From Octopus bimaculoides (lineage: Eukaryota), in contig NC_068983.1 in the NCBI RefSeq assembly GCF_001194135.2, positions 134,246,462 to 134,310,461 on the forward strand: a DNA stretch of 64,000 nucleotides, given 5' to 3'. A program made the translations under genes and the position numbers. A model generated the notes under the pieces. It was not told the DNA's origin, ran no database searches, and worked only from the letters and a program-made list of their open reading frames with translations. Below are positions 23,248-52,268 of this stretch, one piece after another; the first letter of the stretch is position 1, and each line of letters starts with the position of its first letter.

Positions 23248-24268
23248 GGTGGTGGTGGTGGTGGTGGTGATGAGGATGATGATGATCCAGCAGATATATA
23301 ATGATAGACATTCAACCATCATCATCATCTCGTCTTTTCAGGACGCAGCATGTCAACGACTTATTCAACATGTCCTCCTTCATAAAGTCTGTGGTGCGAT
23401 TTAAAGATTTAGCTGCTATTTGTAGCAGATCGAGCGACCCCATAGACACGCTTTCATTGGTTTATGAAGCTCCTTCGCTGCTTTGTCCTTTTTACATTTG
23501 CTTTTTAACATCAGAATATAGGCCACTGAGCAAAGCTAAGAGCAAAAACAGCCCAACTCTCACGTCATTTGCTTACAGACAGCTTATCCAATATGACCTC
23601 CCTTTCATTTTTTTAAAAGTTAATAGGTTTAGATTTGAGAGGTATTTGGCTGCCAGTTTAAGGGGAATTTGATTTCCAGGAGTCATCGTTGTTGTTATCG
23701 CCGCCCTCAATATTGATAATGTCATCGTTTTAGTTAGATAACGGAAATAGCAAAATAAATAAGGTATTTTGCAAACCAGTTGTGATTATTTTACGACAAT
23801 TGAACAACATTTTCAGATTCGTCATTATTTTCTAAATAAACAATTTCTAGTGAATGTGATGCACAGAATTGTGTAAATTTCTTAAACGTAATTTTTGTGA
23901 ACAGATAAGTTTGCTTGTCAGTAAACTGACCGCAAAAGAAATATAGAAAGCTTTGTTAGAAGCAAATAAATTCTCGACTAAGGAGTGGTATGTAGTTTTA
24001 TGTGTATATGAATGTAAGTGTATGTAAAAATGTATAAAATGATATATATATATATACATACATACATTCATGCATACATACATAATTGTATGTATGGGTG
24101 TGCATATATAGTTATTCAATCGTCGCTTAAATAATGGCGAGGTTATACACGTCTAAGCACATAAAGACAGGTGTACGCATATATATGTGTGTGTGCGTGT
24201 ATGTATATGTGTGTATGTGCGCGCGCGTGTGTGTATATGAGTGTGTGCGTGTGTGTGTATGTATATAT

Positions 24269-26048
24269 ATTGTCATCAAACCGGCCGAAAAGGGTGGAGC
24301 TGTAGTGTCATGGTGCGCGGACCTTTATAAAGCTGAAGCTCTCCGCCAACTTCAAGACATCTTCTGTTACCCTCTGCACTCCAACCCCACGTGTAACTAC
24401 CAACAGACTTTGTCATCCACTATTCGTGACCTCATTTCCTCCTCCCGTCTCTCTCCTACCTCCTCCAACCTCATTGTCCGTACTCCGCGCATCCCCACTA
24501 TTTACTTCATTCCCAAAGTTCACAAGACAACAATCTTGGCCTCCCCATCGTCTCCGCCTGCAACTACCCCACGGAAATGATCTCCAAATACCTCGACCGT
24601 GTCCTTGCTCCCCTAGTGGCTTCCCTCCCGCATCTACAACACCAACCATGCTCTCTGTCTGGTTAACTCTTTCTCCTTCCCTTCTGGTCCCTCTTAACTT
24701 CTGTTCATTCTTAATATCAAAAGTTTATGTACGATGATCCCACACAACGAAGGACTTCTTGTGCTTAAACACTTTCTAGACCTTCGGCCTGACCCTCAAC
24801 CTGCCACCTCCACACTTCTTCGACTGGTCGAACTTGTCCTCTTCCTCAACTGCTTCTCGTTCGCAGGGGAGTTTTACCAACAAAAATTCGGCTGTGGCCA
24901 TGGGAACGAGAATGGACTTCAGCTATACGAACCTGTTTGTTGGCTACGTTGAGGCTCAAATATTCTCACAATTCACTGGTCCCACTTCTGAGCTATACGG
25001 TCATTATATCGATGACTTTATTGACGCGACCTCACTCCCCCACGAACAACTGGAATCCTTTCTCTCCTTTGTCCAATCTTTCCATCCTGCCCTCAAATTC
25101 TCGTGCACTCTCTCTAACTCTTCTGTTGAATTTCTCGATATTTGTCAACATCCACCACTCCGCTCTCAGAACCCCCATCCACTACAAACTCACTGACTCA
25201 CACTCCTACCTTAACTTCTCCTCTTCCCACCCTACCCACACTGAGCTCTCCTTCTCCTACTCCCAATTCCTCCGTCTACGTAAGCTCTACAATGGCGACC
25301 ATGACTTTCAGACTCAGTCTCAACTCATGACTCGCCACTTCCTCCTACGTAGATATCCCTTCACCATTATCCACACTGCCTTTATCCGGGCACAATCTGT
25401 AGACCGTGCCTCTGCTCTTTCTCCTCATACCCGCCCCACCCATACCCGTCTCCTGTTTCCCCTCACCTACCCCACCTCTACCCTACCCCTCCAACGTACC
25501 ATTCTCTGAGCCTTCCCGCGACTCCAGACCTACCCTTCCACCTCGTACATATTCTCTAACATACCTCTTCCCTCCTTCAAACGAGCCCATAACATGCGTG
25601 ACCTCGTGGTCCACAGTTTCTTCTGTACCCCCGCATCCTAGTCTGGCGCCTTCCCTGCTCCCACTACACTGTCGCACCTCTCCAACACCACCATCGTCAC
25701 AGGCACTCATCACCGTCCTTATCATATCACCGACTCCTTTACATGCACTTCTAGTAATGTCATTTACTGCATCTCCTGCTCTCTCTGTCCTTCTCTGTAC
25801 ATTCGTCGAACAAGATGCCGCTTGGCTGACCAGTTCGTGGAGCACTTCCGGGTCATCAGACTCGGTAATGACACCCGGTCTCGTGCTATTTCCGTTCTAT
25901 CAGTCATTCACTACAACACCTATCTGTTTTCGGACTGTCTCTGCACAGGGGCCACCCGGGCTCCTGTCTACATCGTGAAGAGGAATTAATCTTCTCTCTT
26001 CGTACCTTAGTGCCATATGGGCTCAACTCACCTCCTCTCTTCATTTGA
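24269..26048 (+). mobile_element. Penelope-like retroelement remnant (probably Neptune-type): frameshifted RT plus GIY-YIG endonuclease
   Basis: PLE motifs in order across frames: IVIKPAEKGGAVVSW, IYFIPKVHK, AMGTRMDFSYTNLFVG, YIDD, HYKLTDSHSYLNFSSSHP, YSQFLRLRKL, CTSSNVIYCISCSLCPSLYI..T...L...F.EH, C-terminal EELIFSLRTLVPYGLN then TGA at 26046-26048. 5'-truncated at a TG/TA microsatellite. Confidence 0.92.
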
Positions 26049-34890: not shown

Positions 34891-36054
34891 CACATGTCTA
34901 TATACATATACACGCGCGCGCGCGCGCGCGCACACACATATATATATATATACAGAGAGAGAGAGGGAAAGAAAGAAAGAGAGAGAGAGGGGGAAGAAGA
35001 CATGAGCAGTATATATTGGGACATTTTTAATTTGTGTTTCATAAACAGACTAATGAGGTTGAAAAAAGCTAATATCTAAAATCCAATAATGAATTCTTAG
35101 AGTAAATGAGGAACTAAACGAAAAGATACTGTAAAATATTACAAATAGCATTTATTAACATAAAACATATTAAATATATCTAATTGCCTAATATATATAT
35201 ATATACATATACATACATACATACATACATACATACATGCATATCTACATATATGTGCGTATATATCCAATTAAAATGATAAGACGTATGTGTGTGTGTG
35301 TGTTTGTGAGTGAGTGTGTGTGTGTGTAAGTGTGTGTGTGTGTAAGTGTGTGTGTGTGTATGTATCTGCCTATCTGTGTGTGAGTAGACAAACACACATC
35401 AACCTAGATAATGCAATCTTACTTCATCTAACTGGTTGTGCACCGCGACTCAACAGGTAATCCGTGCTATGACGTTATGTCCATACAGATTGATCAAACA
35501 GGAAGAATTAGCCACAAACAGACCACATAAAAAAAAAATGAAATATTTACAACTTCTCTCGTGGAACATCAAGATATTACAATGATCGTTCATAATATGT
35601 ATGCACTATACATATTAGTTGTAGACCTCACAAGTGTCTACATATATATACATATATAAAATATACAAGAATAAGGGCAGGGAATCGTCAATTAATAATA
35701 GAATTAATAATTAACAATTTTGCCAAGTAGTTCAGTATGAAAAAACCTTTATCGGTAAAACCATTTATCATCATAAATATACAGGGATTAGCATTGAGTT
35801 GCTTCTCCAACATACTGAAAATTTAGAAATAGCAGTCAAAGAACTACTGATTCTAAACTACAAATTTTTCTCTAAACGGATGGCGATATTTATGGCACAC
35901 CTAGAACAAAAAACCGGAGGGAAAAGCATAAACAAAACAAGTCTTTAGTTAATCGGATACGATCGTTTCATGGTTAAGAGAATGAAAATTTCTCTATTCC
36001 AAATCTTCAGTCCGATATTCTGATAAATTTGAAAGTGTCTATATATATATATAT

Positions 36055-36692
36055 GTAGGAATAATAAATCTCTGAGCGAGATGTAAACAGTAGCAGCACG
36101 ACATCGTGAAGTATATTTGCCACCTAAATGAAGCTAACCCATATGGGACGATGCTACTGTAGTTTATAGCCCCAGGAAAACATCTCGTTTAGCTGGCTAA
36201 CGACACACTGTCTGTGCCCGATCAGTATTTGCGAAGAGAAATCATTGAGAAGGGATGAGAAGTGATTCCGAACGCAAAATACTGTTTTTCCAGTGACAAA
36301 CCGTCGCTGATCTCGAAAAAAAGAGAAACGTCACGAAGTTGTGCTGCTACTGTTTACATCTCGCTCAGAGATTTATTATTGCTTGTTTCTCCTTTTTCGA
36401 GATCAGCGACGGTTTGTCACTGGAAAAACATAGTATTTTGCGTTCGGAATCACTTCTCCTCCCTAGCCGGTGATTGCCACACGCTGATGACGGGTGACTA
36501 CCCAGAAACCCGGGTCTGTGTGTATCACGTAAGGGTAGAGATGGAAATGATGATTTCCCTTCGCAAATGCTGATCGGACACAGTGTCTCGTTAGCTAGCT
36601 GGAGGAGATGTCTTCCTGGGGCTATAAACTTATAAACTCTAGTAACATCGTCCCATATGGGTCAGCCATATTTAGGTGGCAAACATACTTCA

Positions 36693-36696
<4 letters not shown>
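36055..36696. mobile_element. Non-coding fold-back element with three interleaved inverted-repeat pairs and a hammerhead ribozyme, inserted in a (TA)n tract
   Basis: A 36060-36109 / A' 36331-36380 (48/50 identical); B 36103-36245 / B' 36550-36696 (roughly 85% by eye); C 36251-36329 / C' 36385-36464 (near-perfect, small indels); flanked by (TA)n at 36040-36054 and 36695-36758. Mobility is inferred; there is a single copy in this window. Confidence 0.7.
36470..36528 (+). ncRNA. Type I hammerhead ribozyme (dimer-type stem III), predicted cleavage after C36516 (GUC)
   Basis: Stem I CACACG 36478-83 / UGUGUG 36517-22 plus distal GUGAU 36470-74 / AUCAC 36524-28; core CUGAUGA 36484-90; stem II GGGU-GACU-ACCC 36492-36503 with a C.A mismatch at its base; GAAA 36505-08; palindromic ACCCGGGU stem III; GUC triplet. 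Confidence 0.8.
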
Positions 36697-36760
<64 letters not shown>

Positions 36761-37861: not shown

Positions 37862-38910
37862 TATAGGGTGCATCAATTTTGTTGAGGTCATTTGTATAAA
37901 TTTAGAAACCTCATAACTCATAAAAGAAAAAATGGATTTGAAAACAAATTTGTGCAAATAATCTTGAGAATTCTTTTATCTATGTAATGATTCCAACGTT
38001 ATCATCAATGGCTACTTCAATGCAAGGTCGAAAGCGTTCACGTGCCCGAAACAGATGATCTTTATCGATTTTGGACATAGCGCTGGTTATGGCAGACTTG
38101 AGAGATTGTAGGGTGTTATGGACGTGTTGACTGAACTCTCTCTTGATTACGCCCCAAACGCATTAATGCAGTGGATTGAAGTCTGGTGAACATAGAGGAA
38201 ATGAGTCATGGAAATCGGCACGTATCCACTTCGGTTATTCTGATCTTATAAGACTGCGCAGAGTCATGTAAGAAGACTCACAGTCTATCTCTGTCTTTTC
38301 AGAGCCACACAACTTTCTCCAACACCTCCTGTGTAGACAGCAACATTAACTGTTAAGCCTGTGAAAAAAGGAGGAAGCATGACAGCTCCCTCGTTGCTGA
38401 CTCACAGAACCATCACAGTTGCTGGGAACTTAGTATGCATGGCTATTGGTACCTCATTTGGTTTGAACAATTCTTTCTTGCCACATCCGACATGAACTGA
38501 ACCTTCTGCATCAAATAAGACTTGTACCGGATGTCTTCATGCACAATTCATCTGATGGTGCATTCTGAAACCTTGAGGTCCTTTGCAATGGATCTGATTG
38601 ACTTACCGACGTTTTTCTCGATTTTCTTGGACTTATGTATTTTGATGGTATTAAGACCCTGTACATGCATCTTGCGTTTATCTGCTGATGTTGGATCACT
38701 GTCAGTAGCTTCCAATTACTTTCTAACTTTGACAACGAAGGATCGGGCTACCTTCAAGAAGCGAGGTATCTCTGTATTACTATGCTGCGCTTTCAAGGCA
38801 ACGATTGCAGCATTCATTTTCAATTGCTGAGTTAAGCTGACTTCTGATACTTTGATAAGCTTCGGATAGTACTGGCCCAGGCCATGTCTAACTTAGTAGC
38901 ACCACCTGGC
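37862..38910 (-). mobile_element. Decayed Tc1/mariner-superfamily DNA transposon with an internal deletion
   Basis: Minus strand: MNAAIVALK (from 38817), SIRSIAKDLKVSECTIR*IVHEDIRYKSY (HTH-like), HTKFPATVMV..VSNEG, FPLCSPDFNPLH*CVWG (WPPxSPDLNP motif, ~38152-38200), SLKSAI. TIR-like TA-TAGGGTG at 37862; the other TIR was not identified. Confidence 0.8.
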
Positions 38911-39179
38911 GAAGTTATTCAAATCTGGAATCGGACAACATGGCCCACTAGGGTAGAGAGTTATTGTTTACGGAGACATATCCAGGTGTTGGAGGTTTAT
39001 CCTGGATTTCTTGAAGGAATTTGACCAAACACTTCTTGAACTTTATGGAACCTGTTTCTACTTTAATGTGTTGTGGTGTAATATCTGAAAAGTAAGGTAA
39101 AAAAAAAAGTTAGAAGAAAGCTAGGGGTCTTTAAAAGAAGTGTTCTCAAAAAACTGACACATCTTGTATAAAATATGCG

Positions 39180-50899: not shown

Positions 50900-51582
50900 G
50901 CAATATACACCCAGTGGATAATTTTTTTCTGTTGAAGTATCTTAAATGACCCCTAAATATGTCTTTATCCCTTAGTATATAGTATACCATAGTAATGGTC
51001 TGCCAACCTTATATCGTAAGGTTTTTAGTTGTCCATAAATGACTTGCTTTGCAATTCTATCATCATTCATTCGCAAAATATAACCACAACACCCCAGTTT
51101 AACCCTGATCAGGAAATTTCCTATGCCAGGGAAGTTACACATAGACAAAATATCACTGTTCCTCACTATATCATCCCATTTTATTTTGCATATTTGTCCC
51201 AGGCTTCTCATATGAAGGCCGTTTCCTTTATTACTACCCCATTTATTTCATTTATTACTACCCCATACAAGAGAGTTGTTATGACGACTGCTTTATAGAT
51301 TTCAATTTTGGTTTTAATAGAAACTTCATGATTATTCCATAGTCTCTGGCACGGTTTGCCAAAAGCTGAACAAGCTTTGCCAATACGTGTTTCAATTTCT
51401 TTATAAAGCTTGGAGTACTGTTTGTCACAGTAGGGTCAAAATAGGTGAAAGAACAGGCTGTTTTAAGAACTTTTCTTTCAATAAACACTCTAGGCATAAT
51501 CTTTGGAGTATTACCGAGACAAGGATGAAAGAAAGGGTCGTTCTTTTTAATGCTTATCGTCAGGCTGAAGGATCTGGCAGCT
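50900..51582 (-). mobile_element. RTE-clade LINE fragment (C-terminal RT region)
   Basis: Minus-strand peptides AARSFSLTISIKK, FTYFDPTVTN, RSLGQICKIKWDDIVRNSDIL, GYILRMNDDRIAKQVIYGQL...GRP match the RTE/BovB pattern FGLxISxKKT...F.YLGS...LRRILxIxWxDxVxN...GHVxRMxDxRIPKQLLYGEL...GRP. Confidence 0.85.
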
Positions 51583-52268
51583 GAGTAAGATTACAATTAA
51601 ATTTACATATGCACGTTTAACAAACATCTCTTTAACTTCGCTCTGGGAACAGGCCCTTTTGGCCAGAGGGTTTCTCTGGAACGCTAAACCTATTTATCTA
51701 TTTTCTATGTCATAAATTGAGGTGAGTTCCTAAGTAATTCAACCAATGTCAAGTATAAAAGTGACCATTTAAAAACTAATACAATCAGCCAGAAATACAT
51801 TTGTGAATAAATAGAAATAAACTTTTAGCATTCGCTGAAATACCTTGTTATATTATCAGCATCTTATGGCTTCTTTGACGTCATAAGTCTCATTCCAGTG
51901 ATCCTAATAACTCTGAAGCACTTTATTTGTACTTAATGAACGCTTGTAGAAATCGGATCAATGAGTGGTGGCGGTCATTGAAAAGAATAATACGTGCGAA
52001 ATCTGTACTATTTCTGAAATAATATATTCTATACTCTTGTGATTTTAGTTTTAAAATCATTAAAATGTCCCAGTGTTTCCGTGAAGTGAGATGACTGGCC
52101 ACATCACAAAATTAATGGCCATACTTTACAATTACAGATAAACACTAGAAACAAAACTAATAGTAGCAAAATTTCTTCAAACCATACCCTACCGTCATAA
52201 AACAGAAAAATCGTATTGAGCATCATAACTTGAAATGATCATAGATCCGTTCAATTAGGGTTGACTAG

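What the first reader, a model, noticed from the sequence alone, without database searches (positions are those of the whole stretch)
36060..36384. Terminal extension A is complemented by A', which sits exactly in the loop of the C/C' hairpin (DIRS-like geometry)
Seen: the loop between C and C' is 36330-36384 (55 nt), and A' (36331-36380) fills almost all of it. A lies outside the B/B' inverted repeat, so A/A' pairing would cross both other stems (pseudoknot or kissing geometry). Established: DIRS tyrosine-recombinase retrotransposons have inverted terminal repeats, a terminal extension and an internal complementary region (ICR) near the extended end. Inference: read on the minus strand, the layout is ITR ... 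ICR - ITR - extension, so this could be a miniature non-autonomous DIRS-like element or a convergent priming/circularisation device. Caveat: A' complements only the extension plus 6-7 nt of the adjacent repeat, not the opposite terminus as a full DIRS ICR would.
Basis: inference. Interest (0 to 1): 0.7.

Follow-up and report, generated by a model that had tools for sequence, protein, structure and literature searches.

The report
Inverted Penelope-type retroelement insertion with tail
The odd "extension pairs with hairpin loop" layout is real, but it is most likely the ordinary scar left when a small hammerhead-ribozyme-bearing, Penelope-type retroelement was copied into both strands of a (TA)n microsatellite, not a DIRS-like element.

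Summary
A (36057-36112) is 93% complementary to A' (36328-36383), and A' fills the 55-nt loop of a 590-nt hairpin (B+C / C'+B').

The 640-bp element has the form A-X-A'-X', where X is B plus C. There is no unique sequence. The right half is a circular permutation of the reverse complement of the left half. The element sits between two (TA)n tracts.

The only asymmetric segment (36465-36549, right arm) holds a type-I hammerhead-like motif on the + strand. My descriptor gave one hit in the window and 1 hit in 300 shuffles. Rfam does not call it.

Five features match published Penelope-like element (PLE) and retrozyme insertions:
- head-to-head inverted copies;
- a partial tandem;
- a short "tail" at one end only, equal to the sequence that follows the repeat internally;
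- a (TA)n target;
- a hammerhead motif.

The DIRS reading fails two defining tests. There is no left ICR or circle junction, and there are no NTT termini. No RT/YR partner shares the termini within the window.

No second copy could be found in any collection I could reach, so family membership is untested.

Verdict: probably a new member of a known kind. Confidence is about 0.6 and interest is low to moderate.

The parts
36040..36056 (.). Left flank: (TA)7 followed by TGT. Presumed half of the (TA)n target.
36057..36102 (-). A proper: a 46-nt one-sided extension (the 'tail') at the 3' end of the inverted (antisense) copy. 44 of 46 nt match the sense tail at 36338-36383.
36103..36329 (-). It lacks the ~85-nt hammerhead segment; 5 nt (TGAGA) stand in its place.
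36328..36337 (+). A 10-nt sense copy of the unit's 3' end (ACGTCACGAA against ACTTCACGAT at 36687-36696). Its first 2 nt (AC, 36328-36329) can be assigned to either half, i.e. microhomology at the head-to-head junction.
36338..36383 (+). A' proper: the tail sequence in its internal, sense position. It occupies the loop of the long hairpin.
36384..36384 (+). A single T between the tail and the start of X'. It is either the unit junction or a non-templated base.
36385..36696 (+). Its 3' end abuts (TA)n.
36465..36549 (+). Right-arm-only segment. It is absent from the left arm and encloses the whole hammerhead-like domain.
36470..36528 (+). Type-I hammerhead-like motif. Helix I is 36478-83 with 36517-22, plus an outer GUGAU/AUCAC pairing. 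CUGAUGA is 36484-90. Helix II is GGGU/ACCC with loop GACU. GAAA is 36505-08. Helix III is 2 bp plus the palindromic loop CCGG. The predicted cut is after C36516.
   Evidence: not called by Rfam
36696..36758 (.). Right flank: (AT)32, the other half of the presumed (TA)n target.

Best explanation
The 640-bp element is the product of one Penelope-like-element (PLE)-type retrotransposition of a small non-coding unit into a (TA)n microsatellite. The unit is about 360 nt and carries a hammerhead motif. It is either a solo pseudo-LTR or a retrozyme-like unit, written X'-tail in sense.

Shown: the right half (36328-36696, + strand) is a sense copy that runs one unit plus 10 nt. Its order is the last 10 nt of X', then the tail A', then X'. 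The left half (36057-36329) is an antisense copy that runs exactly one unit and ends outward with the tail. The two copies meet head to head at a 2-nt microhomology. Both outer ends abut (TA)n.

Inferred, by analogy with the anole PLE studied in vitro:
1. The endonuclease nicked both target strands, and both 3'-OH ends primed cDNA synthesis.
2. Reverse transcription started at one of two internal sites 46 nt apart. That puts the tail on one side only.
3. The template was tandem or circular, or the RT jumped from a 5' end to a 3' end. That gives the permuted, roughly one-turn copies.
4. One cDNA switched onto the 3' end of the other to close the middle.

On this reading A' lies 'in the loop' only because the direct copy is 5'-truncated just 10 nt before its internal tail. 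The A/A' complementarity is a by-product of two opposite-strand copies of one sequence. It is not a device selected for pairing.
For: 1. The layout is A-X-A'-X' with no unique sequence. A/A' homology continues 10 nt into X, and X' starts from the very last base of X.
2. The three repeat pairs have statistically indistinguishable divergence: A 7.1%, B 10.1%, C 2.6%, Fisher p = 0.06-0.10. That fits a single origin.
3. There is a type-I hammerhead-like motif on the + strand, with helix sizes 6/4/2 bp and a palindromic loop 3. These are the proportions given for metazoan type-I HHRs in PMC4209133. It is the only full-descriptor hit in 128 kb of real sequence, against 1 hit in 300 shuffles. It fixes the polarity with the 3' ends pointing outward.
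4. (TA)n lies on both flanks, although (TA)n tracts cover only 1.5% of the window.
5. The literature describes the same features. PLE insertions are partial tandems with an adjacent inverted 5'-truncated copy and a 30-40-bp tail at one end only, and Naiad-clade PLEs prefer (TA)n targets (PMC8557442). The tail continues the sequence that follows the pLTR, and head-to-head is the commonest arrangement (PMC3846280). The tail is the stretch between two RT start sites, and the enzyme cuts and extends both strands (PMC11167929). PLE pLTRs carry HHRs (PMC4209133). Metazoan retrozymes are 170-400-nt, self-paired, HHR-bearing, PLE-derived units (PMC7229834; bioRxiv 10.64898/2026.07.22.740005).
6. The unit is 359 nt and 46% GC. 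Folded as a circle it gives z = -2.6.
7. The window also holds a decayed RT relic whose homologues carry RVT_1, so retroelements of this kind live in this genome.
Against: - No second copy and no autonomous partner sharing X' or the tail was found. The window has none, the two metagenome scans, the viral scan and the prokaryote-genome scan gave only chance 20-mers or nothing, and an ORF-as-protein search found nothing. No eukaryotic genome collection was available.
- Rfam does not report a hammerhead, even at E <= 10 on a 96-nt slice.
- The motif has an extra C after A9 and an extra A before G12 (equivalently, a C.A closing pair in helix II).
- My descriptor was relaxed after I had seen the motif, and I had no positive control for it.
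- The tail is 46 bp, longer than the published 30-40 bp.
- The antisense copy lacks the hammerhead segment, which needs a second event or an RT skip.
- There is no ORF between the tail and X', so a solo-pLTR or retrozyme-like template must be assumed.
- The decayed RT relic at 24-26 kb shares no nucleotide similarity with the element.
Confidence: 0.6

Rival explanations
1. DNA-level rearrangement. A hammerhead-bearing repeat that was already in the genome (a tandem or solo retrozyme/pLTR unit) was turned into an interleaved inverted duplication. The mechanism would be replication template switching or fold-back repair at the fragile (TA)n tract, with no reverse transcription at this site.
For: Long (TA)n tracts form cruciforms, and 36693-36760 is itself a perfect 68-nt palindrome (I6). 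There is 2-nt microhomology at the centre. The arms are equally diverged. Nothing in one copy can distinguish a cDNA copy from a DNA copy.
Against: It needs at least two precisely placed switches to give A-X-A'-X' with each half exactly about one unit long. It does not predict a one-sided 46-nt extension ending exactly at the microsatellite. It does not predict that both outer ends are 3' ends of the sense unit. The PLE literature predicts all of these.
Confidence: 0.14
2. A foldback or MITE-type DNA transposon. X/X' are long terminal inverted repeats of a non-autonomous cut-and-paste element inserted at TA, and A/A' is an internal or adjacent duplication.
For: The long inverted repeat reaches the right end of the element, and its left arm starts at 36103, 46 nt inside the left end. 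The AT/TA dinucleotides at both ends of the hairpin and the (TA)n flanks fit a TA target. By eye there are mariner-like transposase fragments 1.3-2.3 kb to the right, but Pfam gives no support.
Against: The termini are asymmetric: A is on one side only. The second half is circularly permuted rather than mirror-symmetric. No TIR or nucleotide similarity to anything else in the window, including the putative transposase region. A hammerhead-like motif is unexplained. The TA 'TSD' cannot be told from the palindromic AT at the repeat ends.
Confidence: 0.1
3. One reading: a miniature non-autonomous DIRS1-like tyrosine-recombinase retrotransposon. A' would act as the ICR, templating restoration of the extended terminus and circularisation.
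For: On the minus strand the order is ITR - internal complement - ITR - extension. A 10-nt motif is shared by both ITR ends and the internal complement, which recalls the >=10-nt block shared by ITRs and ICRs in DIRS1-like elements.
Against: The left ICR is absent: the bases next to A' do not complement the other terminus. So there is no circle junction. The termini are not NTT. No RT/RNase H/YR coding sequence and no sequence sharing A, B or A' exists elsewhere in the window. DIRS elements are not reported to carry hammerheads or to target (TA)n.
Confidence: 0.03
4. Whatever its origin, the locus now acts as a hairpin-RNA (endo-siRNA or miRNA-like) gene, or it is an assembly artefact.
For: The hairpin is very stable. 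There are sub-threshold matches to long-hairpin miRNA models, e.g. MIR447 at 76 bits against a gathering score of 200. The assembly is a gap-rich draft, and PLE structures are known to upset assemblies.
Against: All Rfam matches are far below gathering and reflect only a generic hairpin. The arms differ by 7% plus indels and an 85-nt asymmetry, so this is not a chimeric-read palindrome. The nearest N gaps are more than 5 kb away. No expression data are available.
Confidence: 0.08

Closest known systems
Penelope-like element insertions with an inverted pseudo-LTR and 'tail' (e.g. Pen2a_Av of Adineta vaga; Penelope of Drosophila virilis; Poseidon PAc of Anolis; Naiad)
   Same: Head-to-head inverted copy next to a direct copy. 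Partial-tandem (permuted) direct part. A short extension at one end only, whose sequence is what follows the repeat internally. A (TA)n microsatellite target. A hammerhead motif inside the repeat. Short overlap or microhomology at the inverted junction.
   Different: No RT/GIY-YIG ORF lies between the repeats; the tail abuts the next repeat directly. The tail is 46 bp rather than 30-40 bp. The hammerhead core carries two extra bases and is missing from the inverted copy. No family copies are known. Among PLEs, (TA)n preference is reported mainly for Naiads, which lack canonical hammerheads.
Metazoan non-LTR retrozymes (tandem 170-400-nt units with type-I hammerheads, expressed as self-paired circRNAs; proposed non-autonomous PLE derivatives)
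   Same: Unit size of about 359 nt, GC below 50%, no coding capacity, a type-I-like hammerhead, a moderately self-paired circular fold, and a permuted copy that fits a circular or tandem template.
   Different: This is not a direct tandem array. There is only about 1.03 sense units plus one inverted unit, and only one hammerhead. The locus therefore could not release a monomer by double self-cleavage.
DIRS1-like tyrosine-recombinase retrotransposons
   Same: Inverted terminal repeats, a one-sided terminal extension, and an internal region complementary to that extension plus the outer 10 nt of the adjacent repeat.
   Different: No second (left) ICR, no 3-bp circle junction, no NTT termini, no coding region or partner, microsatellite flanks, and a hammerhead-like motif.
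Foldback elements / MITEs
   Same: A short, non-coding, AT-flanked element dominated by a long inverted repeat.
   Different: Asymmetric ends, interleaved rather than nested repeat pairs, no demonstrable TSD and no known family.

Membership tests
DIRS1-like retrotransposon (non-autonomous derivative) | Inverted terminal repeats | tested here: met
   X 36103-36329 against X' 36385-36696
DIRS1-like retrotransposon (non-autonomous derivative) | Terminal extension complementary to an internal region (rE / right ICR) | tested here: met
   A/A' are 56 nt and 93% complementary
DIRS1-like retrotransposon (non-autonomous derivative) | A second ICR complementary to the opposite terminus, abutting the first at a 3-bp circle junction | tested here: not met
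   The bases beside A' (36384-36420) belong to the C' stem and do not complement the 36696 terminus. Definition from PMC3266345 and PMC7192593.
DIRS1-like retrotransposon (non-autonomous derivative) | Element begins and ends with NTT, complementary to the circle junction | tested here: not met
   The minus-strand termini read ATC... and ...CCT (Table 3 of PMC3266345)
DIRS1-like retrotransposon (non-autonomous derivative) | An autonomous partner with RT/RNase H and a tyrosine recombinase sharing the termini | tested here: inconclusive
   None in the 64-kb window. The genome was not available.
Penelope-like element (PLE)-type insertion | Inverted 5'-truncated copy adjacent, head to head, to a direct copy | tested here: met
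   Antisense copy 36057-36329 and sense copy 36328-36696. The polarity is set by the hammerhead-like motif.
Penelope-like element (PLE)-type insertion | Partial tandem (pseudo-LTR) organisation of the direct part | tested here: met
   The sense half is the last 10 nt of the unit, then the tail, then the unit again, i.e. one turn plus 10 nt
Penelope-like element (PLE)-type insertion | A 30-40-bp tail at one end only, equal to the sequence that follows the repeat internally | tested here: met
   A 46-nt extension at the left end only. 44 of 46 nt match the internal copy that follows the 10-nt repeat end. It is slightly longer than published.
Penelope-like element (PLE)-type insertion | Hammerhead ribozyme motif in the repeat (canonical EN+ clades) | tested here: inconclusive
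   My descriptor gives 1 hit in the window against 1 in 300 shuffles. Rfam is silent. The core has two extra bases.
Penelope-like element (PLE)-type insertion | Insertion bias for microsatellites such as (TA)n | tested here: met
   (TA)7 on the left and (AT)32 on the right. TA tracts make up 1.5% of the window.
Penelope-like element (PLE)-type insertion | RT + GIY-YIG ORF in the element, or in a partner sharing the repeat | tested here: inconclusive
   No ORF in the element. The RT relic at 24.1-26.0 kb has no nucleotide similarity to it. Not testable genome-wide.
Metazoan non-LTR retrozyme | 170-400-nt non-coding unit with GC below 50% | tested here: met
   The unit is 359 nt and 45.7% GC. 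Criteria from PMC7229834.
Metazoan non-LTR retrozyme | Direct tandem repeats, each with a type-I hammerhead (at least 2) | tested here: not met
   Only one motif and no direct tandem array
Metazoan non-LTR retrozyme | Expressed as a self-paired circRNA | not testable with these tools
   Only a circular-fold z of -2.6 is available
Type-I hammerhead ribozyme (Rfam Hammerhead_1) | Core boxes CUGANGA, GAAA and UH, with three helices | tested here: met
   36484-36516 with helices of 6, 4 and 2 bp
Type-I hammerhead ribozyme (Rfam Hammerhead_1) | Covariance-model score at or above the gathering threshold, and a canonical G10.1-C11.1 pair directly adjoining A9 and G12 | tested here: not met
   No Rfam match even at E <= 10. 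C36491 and A36504 are extra bases.
Tc1/mariner-type MITE / foldback element | Matching TIRs at both ends, flanked by a TA target-site duplication | tested here: inconclusive
   TIR-like arms exist, but the left end carries 46 extra nt. The TA duplication cannot be told from the palindromic AT ends and the (TA)n tracts.

The most novel reading that the evidence does not exclude
The complete A-X-A'-X' composite, rather than the ~360-nt unit, is the replicating entity. It would be a non-autonomous retroelement whose terminal extension pairs with the loop of its own long hairpin to prime, template or circularise its cDNA. Functionally that is a one-sided ICR-like device, here in a hammerhead-bearing, PLE-mobilised background. 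It would be a convergent solution to the end-restoration problem that DIRS elements solve with their ICR.
Probability: 0.06. Interest if true: 0.7.

Novelty: new member of a known kind. Interest (0 to 1): 0.3.

Why it matters
If the reading is right, the finding is ordinary. It is a decayed, probably non-autonomous, PLE/retrozyme-type insertion in an SSR-rich eukaryotic genome.

Its modest value is as an unusually compact 'fossil' of the poorly understood PLE integration reaction. In 640 bp, with no ORF in the way, it shows four things together:
- two outward-facing 3' ends that differ by a 46-nt tail, which points to two RT start sites;
- copies of 1.00 and 1.03 unit lengths, which points to a circular or tandem template or an end-to-end template jump;
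- a 2-nt microhomology at the head-to-head joint;
- a (TA)n target.

It is also a caution for annotation. 'ITR + extension + internal complement' is not diagnostic of DIRS. PLE insertions with an inverted pLTR and tail generate the same pattern.

Tried and rejected
1. Looked for other copies of the element.
- BLASTN of the element against the window found only (TA)n hits.
- Exact-pattern scans used the A core and the C core. The metagenome scans gave 0 hits for the A core and two chance 20-mers for the C core. The viral-contig scan gave 0. The prokaryote-genome scan gave two chance 20-mers.
- The 103-aa ORF spanning A' was searched as if it were a protein. It found no homologue, not even itself.
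- Ten window ORFs are not in the protein collection, so same-genome contigs could not be fetched.
- Contigs carrying relatives of the window's RT relic come from unnamed ENA metagenome assemblies and hold nothing like the element.

2. Rfam. Nothing reaches gathering in the whole window. The E-value runs gave only generic long-hairpin miRNA models far below gathering and no hammerhead. There are no tRNAs.

3. Pfam on ORFs of the RT relic, on putative mariner-like and LINE-like pieces, and on other ORFs found nothing usable. PDB sequence searches of the RT and GIY-YIG-like pieces found nothing.

4. A second hammerhead core-only match just left of the element (36010-35987, minus strand) passes only the loosest descriptor. 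It has an AU/GU helix II, and the surrounding 440 bp have no similarity to the unit. I treat it as probable chance.

5. Helitron (no 5'-TC or CTRR-3' ends), Crypton/Ngaro (no split direct repeats) and a simple nested palindrome A-X-X'-A' were rejected on reading the sequence.

6. The organism was not identified. The penaeid-shrimp impression from the SSR load is memory only. The lack of close NCBI-named RT homologues does not support it.

Full report
**What is there**

The window is a gap-rich, microsatellite-rich eukaryotic draft: 17 N runs, 36% GC over the non-N bases, abundant (AC)n and (AT)n. It has no tRNA or Rfam family at gathering score.

The finding sits in a 640-bp element, 36057-36696, bounded by (TA)7TGT on the left and (AT)32 on the right.

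The repeat finder and a gapped alignment give three complementary pairs:
- A 36057-36112 with A' 36328-36383: 56 nt, 93% complementary, 40-nt perfect core.
- B 36103-36245 with B' 36550-36696.
- C 36251-36329 with C' 36385-36464, including a 38-nt perfect stretch.

As single-stranded DNA the element folds into one long hairpin, 36103-36696, at -221 kcal/mol with z = -29. A is left as a free 5' extension and A' occupies the apical loop 36330-36384. The overlap of A with B is 10 nt rather than 6-7.

**Anatomy beyond the finding**

Write X for B plus C. The element is then A-X-A'-X' with no unique sequence at all.
- X' begins at 36385, from the complement of the very last base of X (36329).
- A' begins immediately after X.
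- A single T (36384) separates A' from X'.
- The second half is a circular permutation of the reverse complement of the first half. The left half is 'tail + unit' in antisense. The right half is 'last 10 nt of unit + tail + unit' in sense.
- The bases AC at 36328-36329 can be assigned to either half.
- Substitution divergence is 7.1% (A), 10.1% (B) and 2.6% (C), not significantly different. One origin for all three pairs is enough.
- The only asymmetry is an ~85-nt segment, 36465-36549, present in the right arm and replaced by 5 nt in the left arm.

**A hammerhead-like motif sets the polarity**

The right-arm-only segment reads, on the + strand: helix I (CACACG with UGUGUG, plus an outer GUGAU/AUCAC pairing), CUGAUGA, helix II (GGGU/ACCC, loop GACU), GAAA, helix III (A-U and C-G, capped by the palindromic loop CCGG), then C17. 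The predicted cleavage is after 36516.

The helix sizes of 6, 4 and 2 bp and the palindromic loop 3 are the proportions given for metazoan type-I hammerheads. An extra base between positions 9 and 10.1 is reported as typical of PLE hammerheads (PMC4209133).

Statistics and caveats:
- A descriptor I wrote finds this site and no other in both strands of the window. It finds 1 site in 300 block shuffles of the window.
- The core alone is expected 0.03 times per window.
- I relaxed the descriptor after seeing the motif, and I had no positive control for it.
- There is an unexplained extra A before G12.
- Rfam reports no hammerhead, even at E <= 10 on a 96-nt slice.

I therefore call it hammerhead-like, possibly decayed.

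**Comparison with published architectures**

PLE insertions are described as follows:
- They are partial tandems forming pseudo-LTRs, often with an inverted 5'-truncated copy at the 5' side.
- A 30-40-bp 'tail' is present at one end only, and Naiad-clade PLEs prefer (TA)n targets (PMC8557442).
- In Adineta vaga the tail continues the sequence that follows the pseudo-LTR. The inverted and direct repeats overlap by a few bases, and head-to-head is the usual arrangement (PMC3846280).
- In vitro, the anole PLE cleaves and extends both target strands. It starts reverse transcription at two internal sites, and the tail is the stretch between them (PMC11167929).
- PLE pseudo-LTRs carry hammerheads.

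Each of these features has a counterpart here:
- sense and antisense copies head to head, with 3' ends outward;
- a 46-nt extension on one side only, 44 of 46 nt identical to the internal copy that follows the unit's 3' end;
- a permuted sense copy;
- (TA)n on both sides;
- a hammerhead-like box;
- a unit of 359 nt and 46% GC, with a moderately stable circular fold (z = -2.6).

On this reading A' lies in the hairpin loop only because the direct copy is truncated 10 nt before its internal tail.

**Mechanism, shown versus inferred**

Shown: the layout, the junction microhomology, the flanks and the motif.

Inferred by analogy:
- dual-strand nicking of (TA)n;
- target-primed reverse transcription from both 3'-OH ends, starting at two sites 46 nt apart;
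- a tandem or circular template, or an end-to-end template jump, giving copies of 1.00 and 1.03 unit lengths;
- closure by one cDNA switching onto the other's 3' end.

The absence of the hammerhead segment from the antisense copy could be a later deletion. It could also be an imprecise jump across the self-cleavage site, since the deleted interval encloses 36516/36517. That is speculation.

**DIRS test**

DIRS1-like elements need two abutting ICRs that complement both termini across a 3-bp circle junction. They also need NTT termini.
- The sequence next to A' belongs to the C' stem and does not complement the 36696 terminus.
- A' copies A plus the first 10 nt of B contiguously, so it is not a junction.
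- The termini read ATC and CCT.
- Nothing else in the window shares A, B or A'.

Two defining features fail, so the element should not be filed as DIRS-like.

**Limits**

No eukaryotic genome collection was available, and every route to a second copy failed. Family membership, copy number, the conservation of A/A' among copies and the existence of an autonomous partner are all untested.

Rivals that remain:
- a DNA-level rearrangement of a pre-existing hammerhead-bearing repeat at the fragile (TA)n tract;
- a foldback or MITE-type DNA element;
- secondary use as a hairpin-RNA locus;
- misassembly, which is unlikely given 7% arm divergence, indels and the 85-nt asymmetry.

**Verdict**

The best explanation is a PLE/retrozyme-type head-to-head insertion with a one-sided tail, at confidence about 0.6. 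This is a new member of a known kind, and interest is low to moderate.

Noticed in passing
window 24100-26000, + strand: A frameshifted retroelement relic. A composite RT translation with a YIDD box has 249 homologues at E <= 1e-10 (best 69% identity), many carrying RVT_1, PF26215 or PF28514. A downstream frame shows a GIY...YIG-like box with internal cysteines (VIYCISCSLCPSLYIRRT...EH), which by eye is the PLE endonuclease signature. Pfam and PDB searches of the fragments are silent. It has no nucleotide similarity to the 640-bp element.
   Followed up: partly
window 35987-36010, - strand: A second hammerhead core-only match (CUGAAGA, 4-bp AU/GU helix II, GAAA) lies about 30 nt left of the left (TA)7, in the same orientation as the antisense copy. 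It passes only the loosest descriptor (3-bp helix I, no helix III). It is probably chance, but its position next to the element is odd, given 0.03 core matches expected per window.
   Followed up: partly
window 35631-35647 and 36032-36048: The direct repeat AAGTGTCTAYATATAT occurs twice, 401 bp apart, each time leading into a TA-rich tract. It may be the target-site duplication of a separate ~385-bp insertion immediately left of the element. That segment has no similarity to the 359-nt unit.
   Followed up: partly
window 36657-36696 continued into the tail (rc of 36057-36102), and 36262-36573: In sense, an ATG at 36657 reads through the unit's 3' end and the tail (MGQPYLGGKHTSRCRAATVYISLRDLLF). 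On the permuted right copy the same frame stays open through the hammerhead to a TGA at 36571-36573. That stop codon is also present in the left-arm copy. The reading recalls PLE ORFs that start inside the pseudo-LTR, but the frame is short and has no homologues.
   Followed up: partly
window 37983-39021 and 50975-51590: By eye, there are mariner-like transposase fragments (37983-39021, both strands) and LINE-type RT C-terminal fragments (50975-51590, minus strand). Pfam gave no support for the pieces tested.
   Followed up: partly
window 36693-36760: The right-flank microsatellite is a perfect 68-nt palindrome, CGA(TA)nTCG, and so a potential cruciform or fragile site next to the element.
   Followed up: no
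whole window: There are 17 N gaps (5.6 kb) and very dense AC/AT/TG and tetranucleotide repeats. None of ten window ORFs is in the 15-billion-protein collection, and the closest RT relatives come from unnamed ENA metagenome assemblies. The source organism was not identified.
   Followed up: partly
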